DNA of 64,000 nucleotides, taken from positions 1 to 64,000 of IMG/VR virus record IMGVR_UViG_3300027759_000046, one strand, 5' to 3'. This document shows positions 35,152-59,122 of this stretch, piece after piece. Positions within the stretch are counted from its first letter, which is position 1, and every line of letters begins with the position of its first letter. The position numbers and the translations under genes were made by a program. The notes under the pieces were generated by a model. That model was not told the DNA's origin, did not search any database, and saw only the letters and a program-made list of their open reading frames with translations.

Positions 35152-36111
35152 ATGGAACCTATCCTAGTAGAGAATCCCAATCGATTCGTTGTCTTCCCAA
35201 TCCAGCATCATGACTTGTGGGAATATTATAAAAAAGCGGAAGCTAGTTTTTGGACAGCTGAGGAAATTGACCTTGCTGCCGACCTAGTCGACTGGCGAAC
35301 TAAATTAAATGATGACGAGAGACACTTTATCAAGCATGTATTAGCATTCTTTGCAGCGAGTGATGGAATAGTTAACGAGAATTTAGCTGAGAATTTTGTT
35401 AAAGAAGTTCAATACCCAGAGGCTAAATTTTTCTATGGATTCCAAATTATGATGGAAAATATCCACTCTGAGACCTACTCATTGCTTATTGATACCTATA
35501 TTGCTGATCCGGAAGAGAAAATGAAATTGTTTAGAGCAATCGATACTATTCCAGCAGTTGCTAAAAAGGCAGAGTGGGCATTACGTTGGATCAAGAATTC
35601 AACTTTCCAAGAAAGACTTGTTGCGTTTGCAGCAGTCGAAGGAATCTTCTTCTCAGGATCGTTCTGTTCTATTTTTTGGTTGAAAAAACGGGGCCTTATG
35701 CCAGGATTAAGTTTCTCAAATGAACTTATTTCAAGAGACGAAGGCTCGCATACAGATTTTGCAGTTCACCTACACAATAATCATATCAACAATAAAGTTT
35801 CTCCAGAGAGAATCAAAGAGATCTTATTATCTGCTCTAGAAATTGAAAAAGAATTTATCATTGATGCATTACCAGTCAAAGTAATCGGTATGAATTCTGA
35901 CTTAATGTCTCAATACTTAGAGTTTGTAACAGATCGACTATTACAAGATTTAGGTTGTGAAAAGGTCTTCAATGTGCAAAATCCGTTTGATTTTATGGTA
36001 AACATCGCGTTAAATGGAAAAACTAATTTCTTCGAGAAGAGAGTTGGCGAATATCAGAAAGCGGGAGTAAAATCCGGAGATACAGGTTTTTCAATGGATG
36101 CAGATTTTTAA
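35152..36111 (+). CDS. nrdB: Ribonucleotide reductase class Ia beta subunit
   Basis: [50 protein letters not shown] and FFEKRVGEY. Confidence 0.97.
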
Positions 36112-36135
36112 CAATAAAAAACAAGGATTTAAGAA

Positions 36136-38544
36136 ATGAAAGTAATAAAAAGAGATGGCCACGCAGAAACTCTGCGCCTTGATAAAATAACTAACCGTAT
36201 CAAGAAACAAACTTACGGATTAGACACAGACCATGTAGATGCCCTTGAGGTTGCAACGAAAGTTGTATCAGGCCTATATGACGGAATTAGCACAGAAAAA
36301 CTTGATAGCCTTGCGGCCGAGACATCGGCTGCACTAGCCTACATTCACCCAGACTATTCAATCTTAGCTGCACGAATAGCAATCACCAGATTACATAAAA
36401 CAACTACTAAATCGTTTAGTGATACGATTGAACACCTTTACACCTACATCGATCCAAAGACTGGCCAGAATGCCGGCTTAATTTCAGACGAAACGTATGC
36501 AGCAGTTAAGAAGAATGCAAGTACTTTAAATGAGGCAATCATTCATGATAGAGATCTTAATTTCGACTATTTTGGTTTCAAGACCCTCGAGAGAAGTTAC
36601 CTATTAAAAACTAACGGTCAGCCTGCTGAATCCCCACAACATCTTTACATGAGAGTTGCGGTTGGAATTTGGGGCACAGACGTTCAAAATGTCCTAAAGA
36701 CATACGAACTCTTGTCAACTCATCAAATGACTCACGCAACACCTACTCTATTTAATGCAGGTACAAAACGTCCACAATTATCTTCATGCTTCTTATTAAC
36801 AATGCAAGAAGATTCAATCTCTGGAATTTACAAGACCTTAACTGACGTTGCTGCAATTTCGCAAAACGCTGGAGGAATAGGTTTAGCCATTTCAAATATC
36901 CGAGCAACAGGTTCTTACATTAAAGGAACTAACGGTACATCAAATGGTATTGTGCCAATGCTTAAAGTATTCAATGAAACAGCTAGATACGTTGATCAAG
37001 GCGGCGGAAAGCGTAAAGGTTCATTTGCAATCTATTTAGAGCCATGGCATGCCGATATTGAAGACTTCTTGGAATTAAGAAAGAATCACGGTAAAGAAGA
37101 ACGTCGTGCAAGAGATTTATTCTTGGCGTTATGGACACCAGATCTTTTCATGAAACGTGTTGAAGAAGATGCAGATTGGACTCTATTCTGTCCTGCTGAA
37201 ATCAATTGCGAACTTTGGGAAATGTACGGCGAAGAATTTGAAAAGAATTACATTCGTCTTGAACAAGAAGGAAAAGGACGCCACACAGTTAAGGCCAGAG
37301 TTCTTTGGCAAAAGGTGCTAGAGGCTCAAGTTGAAACCGGTACACCATACATCCTATTTAAAGATGCAGCAAACATCAAATCAAATCAAAAAAATCTAGG
37401 TACAATCAAGTCATCAAACTTATGTACTGAAATTATTGAATACACGTCAAAGGATGAGCAAGCTGTATGTAACTTAGCGTCAATTCCAGTAAATCAATTT
37501 ATCAATATTGGAAAACGTTCAGGTAAATTAAGAAAACCTCAATGCGATTATAATTTTACAGAATTGTATGAAGTTGCATATCAAACTACTCTAAACCTAA
37601 ATAAGGTAATTGATGTAAACTACTATCCAACTGTTGAAACTAAAAATTCAAATGTAAAGCATCGACCTATCGGGATCGGAATCCAAGGATTAGCCGATAC
37701 ATTTGCAATCATGGGTTACGAATTCAGTAATGATGAGGCTAAGAAATTAAATAGCGATATTTTTGAGACTATTTACTTCGCGGCAATGGAAGCATCAATT
37801 GACCTTGCTAAAAAAGAAGGATCATACGAGTCATATCAAGGTTCTCCATTAAGCCAAGGCCAATTTCAGTTTAATCTATGGGGAGTAAACGAATCTGAAC
37901 TATCTGGACTTTGGGATTGGACCGCTCTTCGCAAGAAATTAATGAAGTGGGGAGCTCGTAACTCTCTATTGCTTGCTCCGATGCCAACCGCTTCAACTGC
38001 TCAAATTATGGGTAATAATGAAGCCTTTGAACCATTCACTTCAAATATTGGAACTCGTAGAACTCTTGCTGGCGAATTTATAGTAGTTAACAAACATCTA
38101 GTTAAAGATCTAGTTGAATTGGATCTATGGAACGAATCTATGCGAAACCGAATTATCAGCGAAAAGGGCTCTGTCCAAAATATTCCAGAAATTCCAACTG
38201 AAATTAAAGCAATCTATAAAACCGTTTGGGAGATCAAGCAGAAAGATCTAATTGATATGGCAGCTGACCGTGGCAGATTCATCTGTCAATCACAGTCTCT
38301 AAATATCTTTATTAGAGATGTTAATACTGCAAAGCTTACATCAGCGCACTTCCATGCATGGAGAAAAGGCCTAAAAACCGGTATGTATTACTTACGAACA
38401 GAAGCTGCTTCTTCAGCAATTGCCTCGCTTGGATTAGATTTTAACGCAAAACCCGAAATAAAGCCTGTCGATATATTGGAAAACCTGGATGACATTACCT
38501 GTTCTCTAGATAACCCAGAGGATTGCATTGCATGTAGTTCATAA
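36136..38544 (+). CDS. nrdA: Ribonucleotide reductase class Ia alpha subunit with N-terminal ATP cone
   Basis: VIKRDG ATP cone, [40 protein letters not shown] and C-terminal CIAC. Confidence 0.97.
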
Positions 38545-42766: not shown

Positions 42767-43092
42767 TGAGCGAAAATAAAGAATTTACACCGTTATTCGA
42801 AAGAGTCCTAATTAAGCCGGACAGTGTCGAAACCAAAACAGAGACAGGCATCATCTTACCAGTTGAGTCCCGTAAACGTCCAAATACAGGCATTGTTATT
42901 TCGCTAGGTCACCTAGTTTCAGATAACTCAAAATGCCCAGTAAAAGAAGGCGACCGCGTTTTATACCAGAGATACTCTGGCTTAGATGTGAAAGTAAATG
43001 GCGAAGCGCATCATTTAGTTATGGCCAACGATTTAGTTGGAATTATAAATAATAATGCAAATAGCACAATTGAAATCGCAGACTATGCTTAA
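42766..43092 (+). CDS. groES: Co-chaperonin GroES
   Basis: PLFERVLIK, mobile loop KTETGIILP, VKEGDRVLY..YSG and DLVGII. Confidence 0.92.
   Translation: MSENKEFTPLFERVLIKPDSVETKTETGIILPVESRKRPNTGIVISLGHLVSDNSKCPVKEGDRVLYQRYSGLDVKVNGEAHHLVMANDLVGIINNNANSTIEIADYA
43045..43052 (+). promoter_or_regulatory. Late promoter motif (T)ATAAATAA embedded in the groES 3' end
   Basis: TATAAATAA about 33 nt upstream of the HAD-gene ATG at 43085. Confidence 0.55.
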
Positions 43093-43660
43093 GAAATTCT
43101 CACAATTCATTAATGAAAAACGCGGCGGAACTAAACAGATCTTCTGTGATCTAGACGGAGTTATCGTTGATTTCAATCGAGGTTTTAAAAACATTGAAGC
43201 AAACGACGATAAGCTGACTCCTGAAAAATACAATGACAAGCACGGTAAGCATTCCATGTGGAAAATTGTAGATCCGGAAGGCGAAAAGTTTTGGGCAAGA
43301 TTAAAGTGGATGAAAGATGGTAGAGAGTTATGGGATTACCTATCTCAATATGACCCAATCATTCTGTCTTCACCTAGTCGTAGCAAACACTCAATTCCAG
43401 GTAAAATGGAATGGATTAAGAGAAATCTTGGAATAAATCAAGCCAAACCAACTACATCAGCATCAGATTGGGATCCAGCTAGTCGAATCATCTTAAGTTC
43501 AGACAAATTCAAATTTGCAAGATCCAAAGACGATATCCTAATTGACGATACTCGTGCTAAGTTGGACAAATGGACAGCCGCTGGTGGAACAGGTATATTC
43601 CACAACGATGCAACTGATACAATTCGAGTTCTCGAGGAAATCTTTACGAAAAACGATTAA
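43085..43660 (+). CDS. HAD-superfamily 5'(3')-deoxyribonucleotidase-like protein
   Basis: IFCDLDGVIVDF (motif I), ILSSP, K..W and ILIDD (motif IV). Start moved from 43055 to ATG 43085 (MLKKFSQFINE), overlapping the groES stop. Confidence 0.85.
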   Translation: MLKKFSQFINEKRGGTKQIFCDLDGVIVDFNRGFKNIEANDDKLTPEKYNDKHGKHSMWKIVDPEGEKFWARLKWMKDGRELWDYLSQYDPIILSSPSRSKHSIPGKMEWIKRNLGINQAKPTTSASDWDPASRIILSSDKFKFARSKDDILIDDTRAKLDKWTAAGGTGIFHNDATDTIRVLEEIFTKND

Positions 43661-44000: not shown

Positions 44001-47000
44001 TTAGAAAGAAGGCGTAAATCCAGTTGAGTTAGAAGCAAGTTGACCTCCAGCTCTTGTGATTGTAATACGGTTGATAAATTTGTGGATTCCACGTGGGAAG
44101 TCTACAATAATATCGATGATACCTGCATTATTCTCAAGAACTTCTGATCCATTGTTTGAATCATCAAAGATAACTTCAGCGCTTGCAATACCTCTAGCGT
44201 CTTGAACAGCTGCTAAGTAATTCTTAACTAGAGTTTTAACTCTCATACGAGTAGTTACATCATTAAAGTCAAATAAGAAGTTCAATAAGATTCTTTCAAT
44301 ATCTCTTTCAATTGTAACTAGAGCCTCTCTAACGTGGATGTTATTAAGAGCAGATTTTACTCTTTGGTAACCTGTGTTGTTTGAGAATACCATTACTCCG
44401 AAACCTCTACGTCTAACGATCAAGTTGAAACCAACTGGCTCTAAGAAATCACGATCTTCATTTGTTAAATCATATTCTAATCCAGAGATTTCTCCATCAG
44501 TTAAAATACCGCGTTTACCGCCTACAATTGAGAAAGTATTTCCGCTTGTGTATTTTTTCATGAACGCATTTGCAACGTACATTGCCGGTGGAATTGATTT
44601 GTTCTTACCGCTTTCAAAGATTACAACGTTTGGCATGAAATATGAAGAGTAAGAAGAGATTGGAATACCATTCTTATCTCCACTTGCAAATCCCATTGTA
44701 AACGCTGGATTTGAGTTTAAGTCTCCACCTGTTGCAATTGCTGCAGGCGAAACTAATCTAGTTGTTAGATCGATAAAGCTTGGATCAGCAGATCTTTCAT
44801 ATTGAGCAAATGATGGTGCATTACAGATAGCTAGTGCTTTTCCGTGATTTGCAGCAAGTTGAACAATTTGTTGTTTTGAGCTTGGTGAAATTTGACCTTC
44901 GAATGAATCGATAATATAACGGAAATCAACGGTCTCATTGTCAGCCAATGTCATTCCTAAGTTACTACCTTCCATTACGAAATCTAAGATCTTATCTTGA
45001 CGATCAGAAGTTCCATTTGGATAAAGGTCTACATCTGCTAATTTAAGAGCAGGAAGTATTGCACCTTTTAAGCTCTTAACGTAGTTTTTAATTCCTTTAA
45101 ATACTCTGATTGTAGAACCGTCAAAGTTAATTCCTAAGTTATTTCCATCAACTGATGATTCAGTTGTGATTGTGTACTTAAGAGTAGTTACTGTGCTGCT
45201 TGATGGCCCAAACGCAGTTTTTTGTATTTTTTGAGCGTATACTGATTTAATACGTAGTGCACGGCCTCTTTCAAGAGGATCGCCATTACTGTCAGTTTTG
45301 ATTTTTGCTTTGATGTATTGACCCGGTTTAAAGAAGTTATCTACAGTAAGTCTTTTTGATGAACTGTAAGAGTATCCAGCTGCAGCATTTGCAGTAGCAC
45401 TTTCATTTTTTGCAGGGTTTCCATAAAGAGTTGGATCAACTTCAAAAACAATTTTGTTTGGAGCAAAATAGCTAAAGTTAATAAACATGTCAGTGTCGCT
45501 TAGATCAAAATCATGTTTAAATGAATCAGCTGTCGCATTTACAATCCATAAGTATTCATCACCACCATCTAAAATAGTTTCAATATCTACTTGATTTGTT
45601 CTTGTGATGTCTGCGTAAACCGAGAATACTAAGTATTTTACTGAGTTTTGAGTTTTAAATTCTCCGTCAGTTCCAATGTATAAAGTTTGAACATTACTTG
45701 AAGCATCTGTGTACTTCAATAAGTCTCCGCTTTTAACGAATCCATTAGAGTATGCATTGTACAATTTGCTACCTTCAACTGCAATAATATTTGTAGTTGC
45801 GTTTAGATCAACGTAAGTTTCTCCGTTTGCGTAAGTTGAAGAATATGTGTCAACTGCAAAATAGAAAGTCGAATCAGTTGGCTTAGTGTAAGATAGTGTA
45901 TCAATAAGAGCAACTGGATCAATTCCAGTAATACCATTATCTACAGTGTATAGAGTTTTAGCAGTGTCTGTCGTATTTAATTCATCAACACCATAACCAA
46001 CTAAGTCAATACGTTGTTCAGCCATAGGCTCAGTAGAAGATCCACTATCAAATGTTGCATTAGTTAAGTCAATTAAGTCTACTTTTCTTGAATCAAGAGC
46101 GCAATAGATTCCAATTTGAGGAAATAATCTGTTGAAATTTGTATCTAATGAAACAAATGTACCAGTTAAATCTCTAAAGTCTGGAATAATACAACCTTGA
46201 GTTTTTGCAAGTAACTTAACCTCTTTTAGAGAAACGAAATCTCCGAGTTTAGAATCAATAATACCTGCTGCTGTGAAGTACTGTTTGTAAACTGGATCAG
46301 TTGACAATTTCAAGTAATCATTCCAATTACCTTCAACCACTACTAATTCAACAAAATAGTCAGCAACAATATCATCTGGATTTAAAAATTCCGGAATTTC
46401 AACCTTATCTCCTAACAAACGATAGTAATCCTTAACGCTAATATCATAACCGTTAGTATCAGCTACTCTAACCCAAGCAGTTACGTCTTTTCTAGATAAA
46501 TTAACTAACGTTAAAATTTTGTTAGCATCCTTATCAGCTTCACCGTATGTGCCTGGACTAAGAATATAATCATCTCCTAGTTTAATGTTCTTGTACTTAT
46601 TAATTTGAGCAGCGTCAGCAAACCATAACTTTTGAGTGTTATAGAAATGAGACATTGCGTCAGAATTTGAGTTAGCTGACCAAGTTGAGTTATTCGAAGC
46701 AGCTTCGGAGTTAAAGGTCTTAAAGTAAGCAATATCACTATCACTAACTGGTAAAACGTTCAATGCATAAACTGGTCCTTGTCTTAACCCTACGTCTATC
46801 GTACGATGAAAATAGCTACCATTTTTTTCTAATTTAGTATCGATTTCGCCGTATACTGCGTTTAGTGTTCGAGAGTCGTTTACGAGTACTACTGAATTGA
46901 TTGGTCCTTTTTTGCTAGAGCCAATCACAAGTCTACCGGTTGAAATCGGAAGACTTAGGTTAGTGCTTTCGTCAATTTCAATTGTGTATACACCACTGGA

Positions 47001-47033
47001 CTTGAACCTGTTCAGATTTAATTTTTCTGCCAT
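44001..47033 (-). CDS. gp18: Contractile tail sheath protein (T4 gp18-like)
   Basis: N-terminal FKSSGVYTIEIDES..GSSKKGPIN. C-terminal IPPAMYVA, NLIVRRRGFGVMVFSNNT, ALNNIHVREAL and NDVTTRMRV. Late motifs at 47059-47070. Confidence 0.93.
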   Translation of the reverse strand: MAEKLNLNRFKSSGVYTIEIDESTNLSLPISTGRLVIGSSKKGPINSVVLVNDSRTLNAVYGEIDTKLEKNGSYFHRTIDVGLRQGPVYALNVLPVSDSDIAYFKTFNSEAASNNSTWSANSNSDAMSHFYNTQKLWFADAAQINKYKNIKLGDDYILSPGTYGEADKDANKILTLVNLSRKDVTAWVRVADTNGYDISVKDYYRLLGDKVEIPEFLNPDDIVADYFVELVVVEGNWNDYLKLSTDPVYKQYFTAAGIIDSKLGDFVSLKEVKLLAKTQGCIIPDFRDLTGTFVSLDTNFNRLFPQIGIYCALDSRKVDLIDLTNATFDSGSSTEPMAEQRIDLVGYGVDELNTTDTAKTLYTVDNGITGIDPVALIDTLSYTKPTDSTFYFAVDTYSSTYANGETYVDLNATTNIIAVEGSKLYNAYSNGFVKSGDLLKYTDASSNVQTLYIGTDGEFKTQNSVKYLVFSVYADITRTNQVDIETILDGGDEYLWIVNATADSFKHDFDLSDTDMFINFSYFAPNKIVFEVDPTLYGNPAKNESATANAAAGYSYSSSKRLTVDNFFKPGQYIKAKIKTDSNGDPLERGRALRIKSVYAQKIQKTAFGPSSSTVTTLKYTITTESSVDGNNLGINFDGSTIRVFKGIKNYVKSLKGAILPALKLADVDLYPNGTSDRQDKILDFVMEGSNLGMTLADNETVDFRYIIDSFEGQISPSSKQQIVQLAANHGKALAICNAPSFAQYERSADPSFIDLTTRLVSPAAIATGGDLNSNPAFTMGFASGDKNGIPISSYSSYFMPNVVIFESGKNKSIPPAMYVANAFMKKYTSGNTFSIVGGKRGILTDGEISGLEYDLTNEDRDFLEPVGFNLIVRRRGFGVMVFSNNTGYQRVKSALNNIHVREALVTIERDIERILLNFLFDFNDVTTRMRVKTLVKNYLAAVQDARGIASAEVIFDDSNNGSEVLENNAGIIDIIVDFPRGIHKFINRITITRAGGQLASNSTGFTPSF

Positions 47034-47058
47034 CGCGTGCTATTGTTATTTTTTAAAG

Positions 47059-47070
47059 TTATTTATTTAT
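47059..47070 (-). promoter_or_regulatory. Overlapping late promoter motifs ATAAATAAATAA
   Basis: Upstream of the sheath ATG at 47033. A further copy lies at 47123-47130. Confidence 0.65.
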
Positions 47071-47201
47071 CAATCTATTCCCAAAATTGAGCTATTTTAA
47101 GTCTAGTTTGCTATTGCTAGAGTTATTTATCAGCAACCAAGGTGCTAAACTTAAACCCTTTTTCATTTATCGAATAAAAGAAACTATAAAACTGTACAAA
47201 T

Positions 47202-47669
47202 ATGGCAAATACTGACAATTCTTGCGCGAATTTAGAAATTGAAAACCTTTACTCAGCTAGCAAAGATACGCTAGGTGACATCATGACAATCCAGGCCGAG
47301 ACTCAAAAAAATGTTTACGGCTATAACTTCCAAGACATGACATTACGTGATTTAATGACCTTTTGGCACATGAATAATCATGCAATGATCGACGAGATCC
47401 ACGAGGCAACTGATGCTCTTGGCGGAATCAAAGACGGTGCAGGCAATGCAATCTGGAAGCGTTGGAAACAGGCTCACGAGAGCTTCTCTGACAAGAGATT
47501 CTCTGATCTATCTGAATCTGATCAACTTGAATGCAAATTTGAGATTGTGGACATACTGCACTTCTTTATGAATTATGCAATCTCAGTCGGAATGACTCCT
47601 CAGGAAATGTACAATATGTACATGTCAAAGAATGAAGAAAACCGAGCTCGTCAACAGAGAGGCTATTAA
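47202..47669 (+). CDS. gp56: dCTP/dUTP pyrophosphatase (T4 gp56-like, all-alpha NTP-PPase)
   Basis: NSCANL, IDEIHE, AIWKRWK, SDQLECKFEIVDILHFFMN and KNEENRARQQRGY parallel T4 gp56 (NECAHL, AVWKKWK, EDQLEIKFELVDIFHFVLN, KNKHNFERQDNGY). Confidence 0.85.
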   Translation: MANTDNSCANLEIENLYSASKDTLGDIMTIQAETQKNVYGYNFQDMTLRDLMTFWHMNNHAMIDEIHEATDALGGIKDGAGNAIWKRWKQAHESFSDKRFSDLSESDQLECKFEIVDILHFFMNYAISVGMTPQEMYNMYMSKNEENRARQQRGY

Positions 47670-47686
47670 TTTAGTATAATAATTTC

Positions 47687-48049
47687 ATGACACTATTAAT
47701 TGAACAGCTCAATACAGCTTTGGGGTATCCAGGGCGTATGATATCCGGTAGTAAAAGCGGTTACCGTGACCGTCATCCAGATAACTTTGCAATTTTTAAC
47801 TCAAATATCTGCACAGAGTCCGGCAAAGTCTGGTTCGGCGATATTGATTTAACCTTGCAAAAAGAAGCTCTTTGCGAATTAGCGAAGGCTCATAATGAAA
47901 CAATATACGTCCTATATGAAATGGACGCGCGTTTTGAAAACGAGGAAACTCCTCTATTGGGAAAAGCCCCAATCAAATTTTTACCAGATGGCACGTTTAA
48001 AGTTGCCGATCGTTTAGTACAATATATTTCTAAATCCTTTTTTGAATGA
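47687..48049 (+). CDS. Hypothetical protein (120 aa)
   Basis: ORF overlapping the polymerase start by 4 nt (ATGA). Confidence 0.75.
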   Translation: MTLLIEQLNTALGYPGRMISGSKSGYRDRHPDNFAIFNSNICTESGKVWFGDIDLTLQKEALCELAKAHNETIYVLYEMDARFENEETPLLGKAPIKFLPDGTFKVADRLVQYISKSFFE

Positions 48050-49437
48050 TAGTAAGCACAGAATTTAATAGTGACGACTCTACGTTAGTCATCTCGTATT
48101 ATGACGAGACTGGCAATATTGCGTTTGTAAAAAAACCAATCCAACAAACCGATCTTTTTAACTGGGCAACTACTCCAACTCCAACTGAGTTTAGAAATTG
48201 GGATAATCGCTTTCTTAAAAAGGCTCCAAACAAGTGGTTAAGTCGTTTTCGTCTTGAGGAGTTAACTCAAAGCCGTTTACACCAATCTGAACTTGATCTA
48301 ATCTATTCAGACCTTAGCCCCAAGAAATACTATCTCGATATTGAGATTCAATTGACTTCACAAGATTTCCCAGATCCAGCAAAAGCCTTGATGCCAGTTA
48401 ACTTAATTACGTTTGTTAACGAAGATAACGTGTGTTTCATTATGTCAACCATGAAAGACTTAGCACCAGACGTAATGCAACAAATGGAATTAGAGGTAAA
48501 TGATTACTTTAAAGCCCATAAACAAACATTCACGTTAAAATACTTGTTCTTTGAGAAAGAAGAAGATTTAATGGCAACATTTTTTCATAAAGTCCTTCCG
48601 AAAATTCCATTCTTAACTGGCTGGAACGTAATAGGATTTGACTGGATTTATCTTATTAATCGCTGCAAGCGTTTAAATATTGATCCAATGGAAACTATGC
48701 CATGTAAAAAAATGATTGGTCAAGCAAAAATGCCAATTCACTTAGGTCTTCTCGATTACATGGAAGTTTTCATGAATACTAAGCCATACAAAGTTGTTGA
48801 GAATTATAAACTAGACTACATTGCAAATCTAGTGTTAGGTACCACTAAATTGCATAGTGAATACGCAACTATGATGGAAGCTCAGCAAGATATTGAGAAT
48901 TTCGTTAAGTATAACGTGATTGATACGATTCTAGTCAAACTTCTTGAAGATAAACTTGGTCTACTTGACGTAGCTTTTGCGATTTCAAAATTTGCGAAGG
49001 TTGACGTATCTAAAGTATTCTCAGCAGTATTCATCACTGAAGCCTTAATGTGCCGTGAATTCTTAGAGCGTGGCCGTTACATGGCAAATGATAAACGTGA
49101 TATTGAGAGCGAAGCGACATACGATGGAGCATTCGTTGCAAAACCTGATCCAGGCTATTACAAGTACGTTTCATGTTTTGACTTTGCGTCCATGTATCCA
49201 AATATCCAAATCCAGTTTAATATTTCGCCAGATGCTTACATGGGTAAAAAGAAATCAGATTCTCAACTTACTCCTGAAACTATCTTAACTAAGAACGATA
49301 CAATATTTACCAAGAAATTCGATTCAGCCGCTCGAACTATATTAACTCGATTGTATAATGGTCGTGTCGATACGAAAAACGAAATGAAAAAACTAGAAGA
49401 ACAACTTCAAAGTGAAAAAACTACTAAAAATACTTAA
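48046..49437 (+). CDS. gp43: Family-B DNA polymerase, N-terminal subunit only (exonuclease + motif A)
   Basis: YLDIE (ExoI), GWNVIGFDW (ExoII), YKLDYIA..YNVIDT (ExoIII) and CFDFASMYPNIQIQFNISPD (motif A). Stops at TAA in the fingers helix; no KxxxNSxYG or YGDTDS motif. Confidence 0.85.
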   Translation: MIVSTEFNSDDSTLVISYYDETGNIAFVKKPIQQTDLFNWATTPTPTEFRNWDNRFLKKAPNKWLSRFRLEELTQSRLHQSELDLIYSDLSPKKYYLDIEIQLTSQDFPDPAKALMPVNLITFVNEDNVCFIMSTMKDLAPDVMQQMELEVNDYFKAHKQTFTLKYLFFEKEEDLMATFFHKVLPKIPFLTGWNVIGFDWIYLINRCKRLNIDPMETMPCKKMIGQAKMPIHLGLLDYMEVFMNTKPYKVVENYKLDYIANLVLGTTKLHSEYATMMEAQQDIENFVKYNVIDTILVKLLEDKLGLLDVAFAISKFAKVDVSKVFSAVFITEALMCREFLERGRYMANDKRDIESEATYDGAFVAKPDPGYYKYVSCFDFASMYPNIQIQFNISPDAYMGKKKSDSQLTPETILTKNDTIFTKKFDSAARTILTRLYNGRVDTKNEMKKLEEQLQSEKTTKNT

Positions 49438-49447
49438 GAAAATTATT

Positions 49448-50092
49448 ATGGGATACGATATTGATGCACTAATGGCTGTAAAAGACAGCTTTCAGAACCA
49501 AAACTTTCAATGGGTTAAAACTAAAGACCGTTCTAAATTAGGAAAGGTCGTTAAAGTAACCGACATTGCTCCAGGTAGAAATGGATACGTTGCTCAGTTG
49601 TCAGACGGTTCAACCATTCCAACTGACCGTCTAACTAGCGATCTATTAATGCTAATGGACGAACAACCTGCCTTATCAATGGAAGAGATCATGTCAATAA
49701 ATTACGTACCGGGACTATCAGACGCTGAAATTCAAGTAGCAGATACTATTCCAGCAGATTTTAAGCAGGAAATCTTGTCTCAGCCAAAGCCTCAAGTTCA
49801 AATAGAACAAGCTTCACCTCAAGTTCAGGTCAGGACACCGAATTCTGAACCTGGTGATCTGTTTGGCATGTTTTCGCTAGAAGAGACTGACCTAAGCCTA
49901 ATTGTATCAGTCAAGTTGCCGGCTAAGAACTTGCTAAAGATGATGTATTCAAATTCACAAGATCAGGAACAATTCTTAAATAGGTTGGCCGGCTATATAA
50001 ATAATAGTGTAACACCTGATTCAATTAAAGACTCATTAAGAAAGTCATTGGGTCAAGATAAAAAGAAGAAAATGGATGCAACTTCAGCCTAA
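49448..50092 (+). CDS. Hypothetical protein
   Basis: ATG 49448 preferred (the track uses GTG 49412). No polymerase motifs. Confidence 0.75.
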   Translation: MGYDIDALMAVKDSFQNQNFQWVKTKDRSKLGKVVKVTDIAPGRNGYVAQLSDGSTIPTDRLTSDLLMLMDEQPALSMEEIMSINYVPGLSDAEIQVADTIPADFKQEILSQPKPQVQIEQASPQVQVRTPNSEPGDLFGMFSLEETDLSLIVSVKLPAKNLLKMMYSNSQDQEQFLNRLAGYINNSVTPDSIKDSLRKSLGQDKKKKMDATSA

Positions 50093-50663
50093 CAAAATAA
50101 ACAAAAGCACTTCCCAAATTTTAGGTGGGGCATTTGATGTAGTTTCTTTGACTCGAGACACCGATAAAGCGGATCGTCTTATGTGCAAGGTAAACTACAT
50201 TGCTGTTTTACCTTTTGAGAGAACAGCAGACGATCGTATTAAAGCAATTTACGGTCTAAAATTTGAAAATCATGCAACTGGCCAATCTGATACTAGTTTA
50301 TTAGTTGACACGGTTGATCCATCCAAAGACCAAACTCCATTCGACACAGTTTGTCGTGCTCTACTTGAAGAGGCTGGAGTAAATATTGAAGAGCTTGGAG
50401 TAGACGAGAACGATATTTACTATTTAGGTAATATTTCAACCTCAATTCCAGTTAATTCTAAGTTTAAGTGTTATGCAGTTGACTTAACTAAAGCTGCAAA
50501 CCCAGAATCACCAATCGAGTTCGCTCGAACCCTTTCCAAATCAAAATTCGACAAAGATTCTTCTGAAATTGTTAAACTTGGGTTTCACCAAGTTGTAAAT
50601 GGCGATTTTACTGATTCAACTATCCTAGCCGGCTCATTTTTATTAGTTTCATACTTTAATTGA
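50076..50663 (+). CDS. Degenerate Nudix-fold protein
   Basis: IAVLPF..DQTPFDTVCRALLEEAGV..YYLG resembles a Nudix box, with substitutions at the conserved G, E and RE positions. Confidence 0.6.
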   Translation: MQLQPNKINKSTSQILGGAFDVVSLTRDTDKADRLMCKVNYIAVLPFERTADDRIKAIYGLKFENHATGQSDTSLLVDTVDPSKDQTPFDTVCRALLEEAGVNIEELGVDENDIYYLGNISTSIPVNSKFKCYAVDLTKAANPESPIEFARTLSKSKFDKDSSEIVKLGFHQVVNGDFTDSTILAGSFLLVSYFN

Positions 50664-50715: not shown

Positions 50716-51909
50716 ATGGCAAAAACTACAATGGACGCTTTCGCAAAGTTTAACGACTTGCTAGAGAAAAAGGTAAAATCTAAAATTGAAATCCGTGGAT
50801 TCTCCGATATCGAAGAGTACATCCCAACCGGAAACTACTTATTAAATGCACAAATGTCTGGCTCAGTATTTGGCGGATATCCAAACACTAGAAGTATTGG
50901 AATCGCTGGAGACTCTGGCGCTGGTAAAACATTCCTCTGCCTGAATGCAGTTCGCGAATTACAGAAGAAAGATTACATGGTTATCTACATTGATACCGAA
51001 GGTGCAATCGATTCGACTGATTACGTAAAATTTGGAGTAGATCTTACTAAACTAAAGTACTTACGCATGGGTCTAATTAGCGAAGTTAAATTCTACGTTA
51101 ATGACCTAATTGACACAATCAAAGAGAACCCAGGCCTTAAAATTGCTCTATTCGTTGACTCAGTCGGAATGTTAGACACAGATAAGAGTAAACGTGACAT
51201 GGATGCAGGTAAAAATGCGGCAGATATGGGTCTTCGTGCAAAAGAGATGAGATCGTTATTTAAGTCTCTAACTCTAGACCTTTCAAATTACAAAATCCCA
51301 TTCATCTTTACAAACCACACCTATGCCTCTATGGATCAATACACTCCAAAGGGAATGTCTGGAGGTGGAGGTCCTGAGTTCTCAGCTTCAATTATCTTGA
51401 TGTTGAGTAAAGGAACTCTTCGTGATGAGGCTAAGACCACAACCGGAATCATTGTTAGATCCAAGACAAAAAAGAATCGTCTTGCTAAACCAATCGATAT
51501 TGAATTCCATATCTCATTCCATAAGGGTATGAATCCGTTCGTTGGTCTTGAACAATACGTAAATTGGGAAAATTGCGGAGTAGGTCGCGGCAATAAGTTG
51601 ACAGAAAAAGAATTTTCAAAACTTAAACCAGACGAAGCTGACCTATGTTCAAAATTTGAACTTGGCGGTGAAACTTTCTACTTTTTACCTAAGAAATTAG
51701 GAAAAACATATATTGTCAGACATAACGGTGATGCAGTTCCAGTTAAGGAATTCTTTTCAAATAGACTTTTCACAAATGAAGTTTTAACAGAACTCGATGA
51801 GAAGGTTATTAAGCCAACGTTTAAATTCCCTGAAACTCAGGATGGAATTGATACAATGGAAATTGATGAATTAGAAGACTTAACTCCAACTGAAGAGCAT
51901 GACCTTTAA
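50716..51909 (+). CDS. uvsX: RecA-like recombinase UvsX
   Basis: IPTGNYLLN, Walker A GDSGAGKT, YIDTEGA, LFVDSVG, FTNHTY and SGGGG..FSASII. Confidence 0.93.
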   Translation: MAKTTMDAFAKFNDLLEKKVKSKIEIRGFSDIEEYIPTGNYLLNAQMSGSVFGGYPNTRSIGIAGDSGAGKTFLCLNAVRELQKKDYMVIYIDTEGAIDSTDYVKFGVDLTKLKYLRMGLISEVKFYVNDLIDTIKENPGLKIALFVDSVGMLDTDKSKRDMDAGKNAADMGLRAKEMRSLFKSLTLDLSNYKIPFIFTNHTYASMDQYTPKGMSGGGGPEFSASIILMLSKGTLRDEAKTTTGIIVRSKTKKNRLAKPIDIEFHISFHKGMNPFVGLEQYVNWENCGVGRGNKLTEKEFSKLKPDEADLCSKFELGGETFYFLPKKLGKTYIVRHNGDAVPVKEFFSNRLFTNEVLTELDEKVIKPTFKFPETQDGIDTMEIDELEDLTPTEEHDL

Positions 51910-52237
51910 GATACAAACAGGGCTACCGATTAAATACTCGCTAGCCCTTCATTCAGCTTTACCGAGCTACCCCAATTCATCTGACTTTTTATTTGACGTT
52001 GCCTCCCATATTATTAGAGTAACTGAACTAAAGTCTAAAGAGTGGGATTCAGCCGATATTAAATTCTCAACCAAAACTTTAAAATATGTTTTTGGCGAGC
52101 ACATGGCATCCGAGCAGTTTAAGGATAAGATTAGAAATATCTTAAAGGATCTCATTGCTAGTGGAACGCTAACCAAAAAAGGCGAATTTATTTTTATACC
52201 CGAAACGGAATTTTCTAAGTACTATATAATAGCATAA
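51899..52237 (+). CDS. Hypothetical protein, possible winged-helix fold
   Basis: 112-aa ORF coupled to uvsX; C-terminal helix-beta pattern (LKDLIASGTLTKKGEFIFI). Confidence 0.65.
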   Translation: MTFKIQTGLPIKYSLALHSALPSYPNSSDFLFDVASHIIRVTELKSKEWDSADIKFSTKTLKYVFGEHMASEQFKDKIRNILKDLIASGTLTKKGEFIFIPETEFSKYYIIA

Positions 52238-57782: not shown

Positions 57783-58664
57783 ATGATAGTATTTAAAGGC
57801 CAGACTTTTGCCGAGTGTTACCGTGACTCGCTAATCAATCTTTTCGAAGATGGTATTGAAAATAATGCCAGAGGCACCGTGAGCAAGGAGTTGCTTGACG
57901 TTGCGTTAGTTGTCGAAGATCCAACTCAATGCCTATATCAAAACGATAGGCGAGGTTCTCAAAAGAAGTATATTGCGGCTGAATTTTTGTGGTATTACTC
58001 AGGGCGTAATGACGTTAAGTTTATTGCGAATTGGGCTAAGTTTTGGGAATCAATCCAAAACGAAGACGGTTCAGCTAACTCAGCTTACGGCAACCTAATC
58101 TTTAAGGTTAGAAATCAGCACAATCTCTCCCAATACCAGTGGGCAATGCAAAGCTTAATCAGCGATCCTAACACGAGACAAGCTGTAATGCATTTCAATA
58201 TGCCGACTCACCAGTACAATGGAAACAAGGATTTTGTTTGTACAATGTACGCAAACTGCCATATCCGAAACAATAAGTTCTATATGTCAGTTTACATGAG
58301 AAGCAATGACGCTGTTTGGGGTACACCAACTGACGTAGCTTTCTTCTGTTCTTTACAGATGCAAATGTATTCTCAATTAAAAAACTTCTATCCAGAGTTA
58401 GAGCTTGGTTCGTATACTCACGTTGCAAATTCATACCACGTTTACGATAGACATTATGAATTAGGAACAGCAATGCTAGAGACAGCATTCAAACCAGAAG
58501 CACTTCCACACGTTGTCGCAGATCTAGTCGATATCGATGGAGAGCCTAGCCGTAATTTATTAATCTTAATGGATGCGTTATTTGCAAACGATGAGCCGTA
58601 TCTAATTTTTCAAGATGGTCCAGATATGTTAAAATGGATTCATACAAATGTTTCAAAGAAATAA
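57783..58664 (+). CDS. gp42: Thymidylate-synthase-superfamily enzyme, most like dCMP hydroxymethylase (T4 gp42)
   Basis: NSAYG, DPNTRQA, DFVCT (catalytic Cys), MRSNDAVWGTPTD and SYHVYDRH align with T4 gp42 (NSNYG, NPDSRRG, DFMCT, MRSNDVVFGFRND, SLHVYSRH). Asp sits where dUMP-specific ThyA has Asn. Confidence 0.75.
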   Translation: MIVFKGQTFAECYRDSLINLFEDGIENNARGTVSKELLDVALVVEDPTQCLYQNDRRGSQKKYIAAEFLWYYSGRNDVKFIANWAKFWESIQNEDGSANSAYGNLIFKVRNQHNLSQYQWAMQSLISDPNTRQAVMHFNMPTHQYNGNKDFVCTMYANCHIRNNKFYMSVYMRSNDAVWGTPTDVAFFCSLQMQMYSQLKNFYPELELGSYTHVANSYHVYDRHYELGTAMLETAFKPEALPHVVADLVDIDGEPSRNLLILMDALFANDEPYLIFQDGPDMLKWIHTNVSKK

Positions 58665-58666
58665 TC

Positions 58667-59122
58667 ATGACGCCAAAGCAACATAAAATAGACCTCGCTT
58701 ACATTAAGATGGCCCAAGTCTGGGCAGATCTATCTCATGCCACTCGTAAAAAAGTTGGAGCTCTAATTGTTAAAAATAACACAATCATCTCTGATGGGTT
58801 CAACGGAACTCCGTCTGGTTTTGAAAATGAATGTGAAGAAGCTATCCATAATGAAGACGGTTCATTTAAAGAATATAAAACCAAATGGTATGTTTTACAT
58901 GCCGAATCAAATGCATTAGCTAAAGTTGCCAAATCAACACAAAGTAGCGATGGCGCAACCCTCTATATTACATATTCCCCATGCACAGATTGTAGTAAAT
59001 TAATTCTACAGGCTGGTATTAAACGCGTTGTTTACTTGGAAGAGTATCGTGATACAAACGGCTTGGACTTTTTACGAAGAGCCGGTGTTGAGGTTAAAAA
59101 AATCAACATACAAAATGATTGA
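58667..59122 (+). CDS. cd: dCMP deaminase
   Basis: KVGALIVK, GFNGTPSG, HAESNAL and SPCTDC zinc motifs. Start moved from 58634 to ATG 58667, just after the upstream stop. Confidence 0.93.
   Translation: MTPKQHKIDLAYIKMAQVWADLSHATRKKVGALIVKNNTIISDGFNGTPSGFENECEEAIHNEDGSFKEYKTKWYVLHAESNALAKVAKSTQSSDGATLYITYSPCTDCSKLILQAGIKRVVYLEEYRDTNGLDFLRRAGVEVKKINIQND

What the first reader, a model, noticed from the sequence alone, without database searches (positions are those of the whole stretch)
47202..47669. Close T4 gp56-type dCTPase next to the DNA polymerase gene
Seen: motif-level agreement with T4 gp56 along the whole length. Established: gp56 hydrolyses dCTP/dCDP (and dUTP) to keep unmodified cytosine out of T4 DNA and to feed dCMP to gp42. 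Inference: independent support for cytosine replacement in this phage.
Basis: partly seen in the sequence, partly recalled or inferred. Interest (0 to 1): 0.6.

Follow-up and report, generated by a model that had tools for sequence, protein, structure and literature searches.

The report
Distant gp56-type dCTPase/dUTPase gene
The gene is a real but distant (33% identical) relative of phage T4's dCTP/dUTP-destroying enzyme gp56 in an uncultured 253-kb freshwater T4-like phage. The enzyme alone does not show that the phage replaces cytosine, but a dCMP-hydroxymethylase-type gene 10 kb away makes that likely.

Summary
The ORF at 47202-47669 (+, 155 aa) is real. It is under strong purifying selection (dN/dS about 0.05) and lies under contigs from two lake RNA libraries. 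It is homologous to T4 gp56 over residues 6-155 (33% identity, E 7e-26). It keeps all five motifs of the dimeric-dUTPase/gp56 family and folds as an all-alpha NTP pyrophosphohydrolase (pLDDT 91).

"Close" is an overstatement. The protein belongs to a separate freshwater clade that is sister to all Straboviridae gp56.

"Next to the polymerase" is roughly right. A 120-aa ORF intervenes, and the polymerase gene is only the N-terminal part of a split PolB.

The inference needs correction. gp56 homologues also occur in T4-like phages that lack gene 42, so gp56 is not independent evidence of cytosine replacement.

The context does support that reading:
- It is the only dUTPase/NTP-PPase detected in the genome.
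- A thymidylate-synthase paralogue at 57783-58664 carries the full published dCMP-hydroxymethylase signature (S-x-Y, D-x-x-C, Asp at T4 D179).
- Every relative at least 80% complete has an Asp-type paralogue.
- A thymidylate-kinase-fold ORF could replace the missing gp1.

Most likely it is a bifunctional dCTPase/dUTPase feeding a 5-hmC-type pathway. Substrate specificity cannot be read from the sequence.

The parts
47202..47669 (+). gp56-type all-alpha dNTP pyrophosphatase gene (155 aa), predicted dCTPase/dUTPase
   Evidence: ORF. 33% identity to T4 gp56, E 7e-26. phrog_173 2.8e-18. AF2 pLDDT 91.4, all-alpha. Fold matches to DCTPP1, MazG, HisE and dimeric dUTPases. dN/dS about 0.05.
47271..47312 (+). 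Motif I (residues 24-37, LGDIMTIQAETQKN), base-binding helix with Q31 and Q35
   Evidence: Q35 invariant and Q31 nearly invariant. Aligns to the LQQKLN segment of C. jejuni dUTPase 1w2y. Motif I coordinates the U/C base (PMC12524310).
47385..47426 (+). Motif II (residues 62-75, MIDEIHEATDALGG), metal-binding D64/E65/E68
   Evidence: E68 invariant, D64 and E65 nearly invariant. Motifs II and IV coordinate Mg.
47448..47468 (+). Motif III (residues 83-89, AIWKRWK), phosphate-binding 'latch' supplied to the partner subunit
   Evidence: K86 and W88 invariant, W85 nearly invariant. Same WKxWK as T4 and C. jejuni. Role.
47529..47573 (+). Motif IV (residues 110-124, ECKFEIVDILHFFMN), metal-binding E114/D117 and the deoxyribose-selecting H120-F121 pair
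   Evidence: E114, D117, H120 and F121 invariant. Role of the His-Phe couple from PMC5608427.
47619..47666 (+). Motif V (residues 140-155, YMSKNEENRARQQRGY), phosphate and deoxyribose contacts
   Evidence: Y140, K143, N147, R150 and Y155 invariant. This is the stretch that matches Pfam PF08761 and 1w2y.
47034..47201 (.). Intergenic region between the divergently oriented tail-sheath gene and the gp56-like gene
   Evidence: RNA-library contigs stop on both sides (X3: none over 47036-47169; X19: gap 47113-47159), while DNA run X4 bridges it. No convincing sigma-70-type promoter above shuffles.
47687..48049 (+). 120-aa ORF of unknown function inserted between the gp56-like gene and PolB-N
   Evidence: No Pfam or PHROG hit. 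Found only here and in L021/G002 (70% identity) among 80 related loci.
48046..49437 (+). N-terminal (exonuclease plus start of polymerase domain) part of a split family-B DNA polymerase
   Evidence: PF03104 and PF00136 positions 17-145, phrog_2062/262. The C-terminal part is at G000:94354-95811.
57783..58664 (+). Thymidylate-synthase paralogue with dCMP-hydroxymethylase signature (E67, S100-x-Y102, D150-x-x-C153, D184)
   Evidence: 30% identity to T4 gp42, E 3e-22. PF00303 71 bits. Signature columns read against Park et al. 2019 (PMC6400193) and MetaGPA (PMC8670742).
58634..59122 (+). dCMP deaminase, overlapping the end of the TS paralogue
   Evidence: phrog_174 3e-52. PF00383 2.6e-22.
35152..38544 (+). 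Class I ribonucleotide reductase small (35152-36111) and large (36136-38544) subunits
   Evidence: phrog_86 1.8e-63 and phrog_84 1e-204.
43055..43660 (+). 5'(3')-deoxyribonucleotidase-like protein; its role in the nucleotide pool is unknown
   Evidence: phrog_2643 4.7e-24. No Pfam or NCBIfam hit.

Best explanation
The ORF encodes a member of the gp56 branch of the dimeric-dUTPase / all-alpha NTP-pyrophosphohydrolase family.

Shown: homology to T4 gp56 over the whole length; all metal-, phosphate- and sugar-binding motif residues intact; an all-alpha fold; strong purifying selection; presence in RNA libraries.

Inferred mechanism: as a homodimer (motif III of one subunit completes the partner's active site) it uses Mg2+ bound by D64/E65/E68 and E114/D117 to hydrolyse pyrimidine deoxynucleoside tri- and diphosphates to the monophosphates.

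Inferred role: it acts as T4 gp56 does. It removes dCTP/dCDP so that unmodified C is kept out of phage DNA, and it delivers dCMP to the neighbouring dCMP-hydroxymethylase-type enzyme (57783-58664) and to dCMP deaminase (58634-59122). It also removes dUTP/dUDP, because the genome has no other dUTPase. 5-hm-dCMP would then be phosphorylated by a kinase other than gp1, possibly the thymidylate-kinase-fold ORF at G000:88761-89369, and incorporated by the split PolB encoded beside the gene.
For: Homology and family.

Motifs: with motif roles from PMC12524310 and PMC5608427.

Fold: AF2 pLDDT 91.4. The Foldseek top hits are mouse and human dCTPase DCTPP1 and S. aureus-phage dimeric Dut. The twelve best VIA-align hits are all all-alpha NTP-PPases, Z 5.9-7.8, and 1w2y scores Z 5.1.

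Selection: dN/dS 0.05-0.06 with saturated dS.

Only candidate enzyme in the genome: no trimeric dUTPase, no MazG, no PRA-PH, no second dUTPase_2 or gp56 copy.

Partner enzyme: the TS paralogue has the full hydroxymethylase signature S-x-Y, D-x-x-C and Asp at T4 D179, whereas the genome's own canonical ThyA has P-x-Y, L-x-x-C and Asn (PMC6400193; PMC8670742).

Co-occurrence: an Asp-type TS paralogue is present in all 7 genomes at least 80% complete that carry this gp56-like gene (G000, G002, G006, G010, G011, G021, G023) and in several fragments.

Rest of the T4-like scheme: dCMP deaminase and a canonical ThyA are present.

Candidate kinase: thymidylate-kinase fold, with Atlas look-alikes pointing the same way.

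Expression hint: RNA-library contigs identical to the gene, with a gap over the upstream intergenic region that a DNA run bridges.
Against: Substrate specificity was not and cannot be read from the sequence. gp56 homologues from phages without gene 42 share the same motif residues, and the window clade lies outside the whole Straboviridae gp56 group.

No gp1-type dNMP kinase and no T4 alpha- or beta-glucosyltransferase were found (the latter two searches had no positive control).

Pfam dUTPase_2 is missed by 1.4 bits (21.5 against 22.9), although T4 gp56 itself scores only 25.4.

Fold-search Z values are middling for a helical protein.

The RNA-library evidence rests on contigs and cannot prove transcription.

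Confidence: 0.6

Rival explanations
1. Housekeeping dUTPase only. The enzyme hydrolyses dUTP/dUDP to protect phage DNA from uracil and to feed dUMP to the phage ThyA, with no physiologically relevant dCTPase activity. Any cytosine modification would then be partial or made by other means.
For: The family is annotated and modelled as dUTPase (PF08761, NF049964). gp56 homologues exist in T4-like phages that lack gene 42: Petrov 2010 and 4 of 13 in my sample. The genome has no other dUTPase but does have dCMP deaminase and ThyA, which need dUTP control. Motif residues do not distinguish the two cases.
Against: A dCMP-hydroxymethylase-signature enzyme is conserved beside it in every near-complete relative. 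It needs a dCMP supply and is useless for protection unless dCTP is excluded. No other NTP-PPase is encoded to do that. Characterised dimeric dUTPases of phages tend to accept dCTP as well (PMC5608427; PMC12524310).
Confidence: 0.27
2. A broader or different 'house-cleaning' NTP pyrophosphatase of the MazG/DCTPP1 type, whose main substrate is another canonical or non-canonical dNTP (for example 5-substituted dCTP, dTTP or dITP) rather than dCTP/dUTP.
For: The best structural matches are DCTPP1, HisE and MazG proteins rather than the C. jejuni dUTPase. One S. aureus-phage dimeric Dut also shows dITPase activity.
Against: Sequence similarity is far stronger to gp56 (E 1e-23) than to any MazG; there is no PF03819 or PF01503 hit. 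The dimeric-dUTPase-specific motifs III and V and the His-Phe pair are present. Hydrolysing 5-hm-dCTP would defeat the co-encoded hydroxymethylase.
Confidence: 0.08
3. The protein mainly acts through binding rather than catalysis, for example as a moonlighting regulator (like staphylococcal phage Duts that bind Stl) or as a structural member of a dNTP-synthesis/replisome complex. That would explain its unusual conservation and its fixed place beside PolB.
For: It is 70-81% identical between lineages whose PolB-N is only 31-35% identical. It lies within 300 nt of PolB-N in 73 of 80 loci, on either side of it. It has a conserved N-terminal N-x-C (Cys8) with no known catalytic role.
Against: All catalytic residues are invariant under strong purifying selection, which indicates that catalysis is retained. 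No partner was tested. A binding role would add to the enzymatic one rather than replace it.
Confidence: 0.05

Closest known systems
Phage T4 gp56 dCTPase-dUTPase (and Straboviridae homologues, PHROG 173)
   Same: Homologous over the whole length (33% identity, E 7e-26). Same five motifs, including QxxxQ, DExxE, WKxWK, ExxDxxHF and YxxKNxxNxxRQxxGY-COOH at the very C-terminus. Conserved N-terminal N-x-C. Encoded in a T4-like replication module together with gp41, UvsX, gp46/47, a gp42-type enzyme, cd and a canonical TS.
   Different: It is 16 residues shorter, lacking part of the N-terminal helix region. It forms a separate clade outside all sampled Straboviridae gp56. It sits beside the split PolB rather than near primase, dam or soc. 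The pathway around it lacks gp1 and the glucosyltransferases. Its activity is untested.
Dimeric dUTPases of Campylobacter jejuni and trypanosomatids (Pfam PF08761; PDB 1w2y/2cic, 2yay, 1ogl)
   Same: Same superfamily and motif set. A profile of the gp56 group finds 1w2y at E 1.8e-5. Structural match Z 5.1 over 105 residues. Metal ligands and the His-Phe sugar gate are conserved.
   Different: Those enzymes are 229-280 aa with an extra mobile domain. The second base-side residue aligns as Asn in C. jejuni and Gln here. Pfam score is just below the gathering threshold. The NCBIfam epsilonproteobacterial dUTPase model scores 22.9 bits against a cut-off of 300.
Dimeric Duts of Staphylococcus aureus phages (phiDI, phiNM1; PDB 5myf/5myi/5myd)
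   Same: Small phage-encoded all-alpha enzymes of similar length with measured dCTPase as well as dUTPase activity (PMC5608427). Structural matches: Foldseek probability 0.96-0.97 and VIA Z 5.7.
   Different: They replace the motif IV His by Ala and have a truncated motif V. The window protein keeps H120-F121 and a full motif V. There is no variable 'motif VI' insert here.
DCTPP1 / MazG-type all-alpha NTP pyrophosphatases
   Same: Best structural matches: 2a3q Z 7.8 over 109 residues, and 6sqz mouse dCTPase with dCMPNPP. Same four-helix core and metal-binding ExxE/ExxD pairs.
   Different: No detectable sequence-family match (PF03819 and PF01503 negative). They lack motifs III and V of the dimeric dUTPase/gp56 type.

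Membership tests
gp56-type dCTPase/dUTPase (T4 gp56, PHROG 173) | Significant full-length sequence homology to T4 gp56 | tested here: met
   BLASTP 33% identity, residues 6-155 against 5-171, E 7e-26. phrog_173 is the top family for both proteins. The best phage-database hits are gp56 genes.
gp56-type dCTPase/dUTPase (T4 gp56, PHROG 173) | Five conserved motifs with the Mg-binding acidic residues, the WKxWK latch, the His-Phe sugar gate and the C-terminal KN..N..RQ..GY | tested here: met
   All present. 14 columns are invariant across 12 diverse sequences.
gp56-type dCTPase/dUTPase (T4 gp56, PHROG 173) | All-alpha NTP-pyrophosphohydrolase fold | tested here: met
   AF2 model pLDDT 91.4, helices only. 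The top 12 VIA-align matches are all superfamily members, Z 5.9-7.8. Z values are middling for helical proteins.
gp56-type dCTPase/dUTPase (T4 gp56, PHROG 173) | Hydrolysis of dCTP/dCDP (as well as dUTP/dUDP) to the monophosphate | not testable with these tools
   No sequence determinant separates gp56 of gene-42-plus and gene-42-minus phages. An enzyme assay is needed.
gp56-type dCTPase/dUTPase (T4 gp56, PHROG 173) | Homo-oligomer (dimer or tetramer) with motif III donated across the interface | not tested
gp56-type dCTPase/dUTPase (T4 gp56, PHROG 173) | Membership of the Straboviridae gp56 clade in a phylogeny | tested here: not met
   The window clade (13 rows, support 90/82) is separate from the Straboviridae clade (95/94), with long internal branches. 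It is a sister lineage, not a close T4 relative. Bacterial dimeric dUTPases were not in the tree.
Pfam dUTPase_2 (PF08761) | Score at or above the gathering threshold (22.9 bits) | tested here: not met
   21.5 bits, E 3e-4. T4 gp56 scores 25.4, and relatives L228 and L230 score 28.9 and 33.5. This is a marginal miss that is typical of this branch.
T4-type cytosine-replacement pathway (gp56 + gp42 + gp1, with or without glucosyltransferases) | dCMP hydroxymethylase: TS homologue with catalytic Cys, Asp at T4 D179, Asp three residues before the Cys, and S-x-Y | tested here: met
   Window 57783-58664 has C153, D184, D150 and S100/Y102. The own ThyA has L, N and P at the corresponding positions. 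SP8 dUMP-HMase has Asn. Signature from PMC6400193.
T4-type cytosine-replacement pathway (gp56 + gp42 + gp1, with or without glucosyltransferases) | gp1-type dNMP kinase that accepts 5-hm-dCMP | tested here: not met
   phrog_139 gives only a 13-bit P-loop hit with stops, and tblastn with T4 gp1 is negative. A thymidylate-kinase-fold ORF (G000:88761-89369) is a possible substitute; its substrate is unknown.
T4-type cytosine-replacement pathway (gp56 + gp42 + gp1, with or without glucosyltransferases) | alpha- or beta-glucosyltransferase acting on hmC DNA | tested here: inconclusive
   No tblastn or PHROG hit, but the PHROG searches had no positive control, and many hmC phages lack these enzymes.
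Trimeric dUTPase (PF00692) | Match to the beta-barrel dUTPase family | tested here: not met
   No hit in the ORF or anywhere in the 253-kb genome.

The most novel reading that the evidence does not exclude
A widespread freshwater clade of 250-270-kb T4-like phages, with kin of the same enzyme in 78-kb phages, runs a re-tooled cytosine-replacement pathway. Its parts would be a deeply diverged gp56-like dCTPase (their most conserved protein, held beside a split PolB), a new subfamily of dCMP hydroxymethylase, and a thymidylate-kinase-fold kinase in place of gp1. No known glucosyltransferase is present. Their DNA would therefore carry 5-hmC or a not yet described derivative, which would make part of lake viromes resistant to restriction and CRISPR and skew sequencing-based surveys.
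Probability: 0.4. Interest if true: 0.55.

Novelty: new member of a known kind. Interest (0 to 1): 0.35.

Why it matters
On its own the gene is an ordinary, correctly recognised member of a known enzyme family. Its value lies in context. Together with the hydroxymethylase-signature gene, it predicts that an abundant, uncultured group of large freshwater phages replaces cytosine in its DNA. More than 100 IMG/VR contigs and over 650 protein clusters belong to this group. The prediction is directly testable by an enzyme assay, by nucleoside LC-MS, or by modification-selective sequencing of lake viromes. The work also gives a practical caution for annotation: a gp56 homologue by itself does not predict modified DNA, whereas the S-x-Y / D-x-x-C / Asp signature of the TS paralogue is the informative marker.

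Tried and rejected
1. I looked for sequence determinants that separate dCTPase-competent gp56 from dUTPase-only gp56. I split 13 Straboviridae homologues by presence of a gp42-type gene. No column or clade discriminates in a way that places the window protein. In particular, the His of the motif IV His-Phe pair, proposed as a uracil determinant, is present in T4 gp56 too.

2. A megablast of 8 kb around the gene against the phage database found no match, so no cultured close relative was identified.

3. A single-sequence PDB search gave only a weak hit to 1w2y (E 0.013). A profile search improved this to 1.8e-5.

4. Foldseek against the PDB gave no hit at E <= 0.001. I relied on the consistency of the hit list and on VIA-align.

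There is therefore no evidence either way on oligomerisation.

6. Searches for gp1, alpha-gt, beta-gt, tk and dam by tblastn were all negative. gp44, gp62 and gp55 were also missed in that run, so BLAST negatives in this divergent genome carry little weight.

7. The promoter and terminator scan gave nothing above shuffled expectation upstream of the gene.

8. I considered recent horizontal transfer as the reason for the high conservation across lineages. I rejected it because synonymous sites are saturated.

9. I considered thymine replacement (a dUMP hydroxymethylase pathway, as in SPO1/SP8), because the TS paralogue's database hits include such enzymes. I rejected it because the specificity residue is Asp rather than Asn, and because the phage keeps a canonical ThyA.

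10. The large representative-protein search was not used. The family assignment was already settled by cheaper searches.
Full report
**1. The observation**

The window holds a single ORF at exactly 47202-47669 on the + strand (155 aa, ATG start). It lies between a divergently oriented 1010-aa tail-sheath gene (44001-47033, minus strand) and a replication module.

A pairwise BLASTP with T4 gp56, taken from NC_000866, gives 33% identity and 51% positives over residues 6-155, E 7e-26. The top PHROG family is phrog_173 (2.8e-18), which is also the family of T4 gp56.

A tblastn against 50,697 phage records finds 1476 records. The best are annotated gp56/dCTPase genes of T4-like phages of Providencia, Morganella, Aeromonas, Salmonella, Yersinia and Escherichia, at 35-39% identity and E about 1e-23. 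The match is therefore real and far beyond chance, and it runs along the whole protein.

"Close" is not justified, because no phage record reaches 60% identity.

**2. Family features**

I aligned the ORF with gp56 of T4, 44RR2.8t, Acj61, PSTRCR_121, GEC-3S, Rpl1 and S16, two clade relatives and two actinophage dimeric dUTPases. Fourteen columns are invariant: Q35, E68, G74, K86, W88, E114, D117, H120, F121, Y140, K143, N147, R150 and Y155. Seven more are nearly invariant: Q31, D64, E65, W85, E110, G130 and E135.

These residues fall into the five motifs of dimeric dUTPases:
- Motif I, on the base-binding helix, holds Q31 and Q35.
- Motifs II and IV bind the metal (D64/E65/E68 and E114/D117).
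- Motif IV also holds the His-Phe deoxyribose gate (H120-F121).
- Motifs III (WKRWK) and V (YMSKNEENRARQQRGY) contact the phosphates.

The motif roles come from PMC12524310 and PMC5608427.

A profile of this alignment finds the C. jejuni dimeric dUTPase 1w2y at E 1.8e-5.

Pfam dUTPase_2 scores 21.5 bits, just under its 22.9-bit threshold. T4 gp56 itself reaches only 25.4 bits, so the miss is a property of this branch and is no argument against membership.

**3. Fold**

AlphaFold2 on a 20-sequence alignment (A2) gives pLDDT 91.4, pTM 0.82 and an all-helical model.

Foldseek finds no PDB match at E <= 0.001. Its first rows are nevertheless mouse and human dCTPase DCTPP1, RS21-C6, S. aureus-phage dimeric Duts and MazG proteins, with probabilities near 1.

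VIA-align against 48,161 representative chains ranks twelve all-alpha NTP pyrophosphohydrolases first (Z 5.9-7.8), with 5myd at Z 5.7 and 1w2y at Z 5.1. These Z values are middling for helical proteins. It is the consistency of the list that agrees with the sequence assignment.

**4. Is it a working gene?**

The word search found 657 homologous protein clusters. The top 120 are 75-99% identical and lie on contigs of up to 349 kb. IMG/VR holds 112 related contigs.

Against relatives, dN/dS is 0.05-0.06, and synonymous sites are saturated in the more distant comparisons.

The stretch occurs in freshwater, lake and river metagenomes. Two lake or freshwater RNA libraries contain contigs over the gene: X3 is identical and X19 comes from a roughly 91% relative. 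Both libraries have a gap over the upstream intergenic region, which a DNA run bridges. This is consistent with transcription, but contigs cannot prove it.

**5. Genome context**

The window is the first 64 kb of a 253,137-bp IMG/VR virus record estimated to be 94% complete. The gene order is:
- gp56-like gene
- a 120-aa ORF
- PolB N-terminal part
- two ORFs of unknown function
- UvsX
- a further ORF of unknown function (51899-52237)
- gp41 helicase
- gp47 and gp46
- a thymidylate-synthase paralogue
- dCMP deaminase

. Upstream are nrdB/nrdA, gp32, RNase H, a GroES-like protein and a 5'(3')-deoxyribonucleotidase-like protein.

The polymerase is split. Residues matching PF00136 positions 17-145 are in the window, and the rest is in a 485-aa ORF at G000:94354-95811, followed by primase.

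The 120-aa ORF between the gp56-like gene and PolB-N is found only here and in one relative. In 73 of 80 related loci PolB-N lies within 300 nt of the gp56-like gene, downstream in 57 and upstream in 16. "Next to the polymerase" is therefore a true and conserved feature of the clade, with the qualifications given in the observation check.

**6. Does gp56 imply cytosine replacement?**

In general it does not. Petrov et al. (PMC2993671) list gene 56 alleles in all the T4-related genomes of their table except Aeh1, 65, KVP40 and nt-1, but gene 42 only in a subset.

I checked this directly on 13 Straboviridae carrying a gp56 homologue. Nine also have a short TS paralogue of gp42 type. Four have only the canonical TS: GEC-3S (Krischvirus), Rpl1 (Slopekvirus), and Cronuts and EC-F1 (both Pseudotevenvirus).

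The gp42-minus proteins keep the same motifs. In the ML tree they sit inside the Straboviridae clade. The window protein belongs to a separate clade of 13 freshwater sequences (support 90/82) that joins the Straboviridae clade (95/94) through long branches.

Phylogeny and motifs therefore cannot assign dCTP specificity.

**7. Evidence that does bear on cytosine replacement**

(a) The TS paralogue at 57783-58664 is 30% identical to T4 gp42 (E 3e-22). It has Asp (D184) at the position of T4 Asp179 / E. coli Asn177. This is the established determinant of dCMP versus dUMP specificity (Graves et al. 1992, Hardy & Nalivaika 1992 and Liu & Santi 1992, as cited in PMC8670742; and PMC6400193).

It also has the signature that Park et al. 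propose for hydroxymethylation: an Asp three residues before the catalytic Cys (D150-F-V-C153) and S-x-Y (S100, Y102). In the same alignment the phage's own canonical ThyA (G000:206230-207372) shows L-x-x-C, P-x-Y and Asn. The SP8 dUMP hydroxymethylase shows D-x-x-C with Asn.

(b) The gp56-like protein is the only candidate for both the dUTPase and the dCTPase job. The genome shows no trimeric dUTPase, no MazG, no PRA-PH and no second dUTPase_2 or gp56 copy.

(c) Co-occurrence. Every genome of the clade or its kin that is at least 80% complete and carries this gp56-like gene also has an Asp-type TS paralogue. These are G000, G002, G006, G010, G011 and the two complete 78-kb phages G021 and G023. 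The contigs without one are all 15-54% complete.

Some lineages (G007, G010, G019, G021, G023) carry a different Asp-type paralogue with H-x-Y and R-x-x-C. Its chemistry is unclear.

(d) dCMP deaminase and a canonical ThyA are present, as in T4.

**8. Missing or replaced parts of the T4 scheme**

No gp1-type dNMP kinase was found.

A 202-aa P-loop ORF (G000:88761-89369, minus strand) is conserved in the closer relatives. It has no PHROG match and only sub-threshold generic P-loop (AAA-type) matches in Pfam. It resembles viral thymidylate-kinase/dNK-like clusters in the ESM Atlas. It folds (pLDDT 84) like thymidylate kinases: vaccinia 2v54 at E 3.9e-6, plus yeast and M. tuberculosis TMPK. It is a candidate for the kinase step and nothing more.

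T4 alpha- and beta-glucosyltransferases were not detected. Those PHROG searches had no positive control, and many hmC phages lack these enzymes anyway.

**9. Conclusion on function**

The most likely reading (about 0.6) is a bifunctional dCTPase/dUTPase working as in T4. It would degrade dCTP/dCDP and dUTP/dUDP to the monophosphates, feed dCMP to the hydroxymethylase-type enzyme and to dCMP deaminase, and keep C and U out of phage DNA.

The main rival (about 0.27) is a dUTPase-only housekeeping role. Minor rivals are another NTP-PPase specificity and a predominantly binding or scaffolding role.

Family membership itself is very likely (above 0.9). The substrate range is inferred from context and was not tested.

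**10. Novelty**

This is a new, deeply branching member of a known enzyme family in an uncultured freshwater phage group. It is not a new kind of system.

The more interesting implication is the predicted modified cytosine in an abundant lake phage clade, together with the unusual conservation and placement of the gene. It is 70-81% identical where PolB-N is only 31-35% identical.

**11. Limits**

- No bacterial or trypanosomatid dimeric dUTPase was in the tree.
- The large representative-protein search was deliberately not used.

Noticed in passing
window 48046-49437, and G000:94354-95811 (L010:8355-9812): The family-B DNA polymerase is split into two genes 45 kb apart; the C-terminal part sits just before the primase gene. 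In a more distant relative (L086) the two parts are only about 4 kb apart, separated by RNR-like genes.
   Followed up: partly
window 47202-47669 compared with loci L012-L091: The gp56-like protein is the most conserved protein across these lineages: 70-81% identity where PolB-N is 31-35%, UvsX 42% and gp41 35%. Synonymous sites are saturated, so this reflects constraint and not recent transfer. The gene stays within 300 nt of PolB-N in 73 of 80 loci, on either side of it.
   Followed up: partly
window 47687-48049: A 120-aa ORF with no family match is inserted between the gp56-like gene and PolB-N. Among 80 related loci it is present only here and in one relative (L021, 70% identity).
   Followed up: partly
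window 47223-47225 (Cys8): An N-terminal N-x-C motif (Cys8) is invariant in the whole freshwater clade and is shared with T4-type gp56 (FNEC), but is absent from the actinophage dUTPases. No role is known for it.
   Followed up: no
L107, L108, L246, L247, L250 (records G010, G007, G021, G023, G019): Other phages that carry this gp56-like gene have a different thymidylate-synthase-like paralogue. It has Asp at the specificity position but H-x-Y and R-x-x-C in place of the hydroxymethylase signature. It may be a different dCMP-modifying chemistry.
   Followed up: no
G000:88761-89369 (L010:2762-3370, minus strand): A 202-aa P-loop ORF has no PHROG match and only sub-threshold generic P-loop matches in Pfam, but its predicted structure resembles thymidylate kinases (vaccinia TMPK 2v54, E 3.9e-6). 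It is a candidate replacement for the missing gp1 dNMP kinase.
   Followed up: partly
window 43055-43660: A 5'(3')-deoxyribonucleotidase-like gene (phrog_2643, 4.7e-24) lies beside the replication and nucleotide-metabolism genes. Its role in shaping the dNMP pool is unknown.
   Followed up: no
G000:206230-207372 (L011:6230-7372, minus strand): The canonical thymidylate synthase is 380 aa. The Pfam match is broken into two pieces, which suggests an insertion of roughly 100 residues relative to ordinary ThyA. Relatives have similar lengths (354-432 aa).
   Followed up: no
window 44001-47033 and 8600-14716 (minus strand): The tail sheath protein is unusually long (1010 aa, with PHROG tail-sheath matches mainly at its C-terminal end), and there is a 2038-aa ORF in the structural module.
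   Followed up: no
window 46500-50500 in runs X3, X18 and X19: Lake and freshwater metatranscriptome libraries contain contigs identical or about 91% identical to this region. This suggests active infections in the sampled lakes. The window itself probably derives from a freshwater metagenome.
   Followed up: partly
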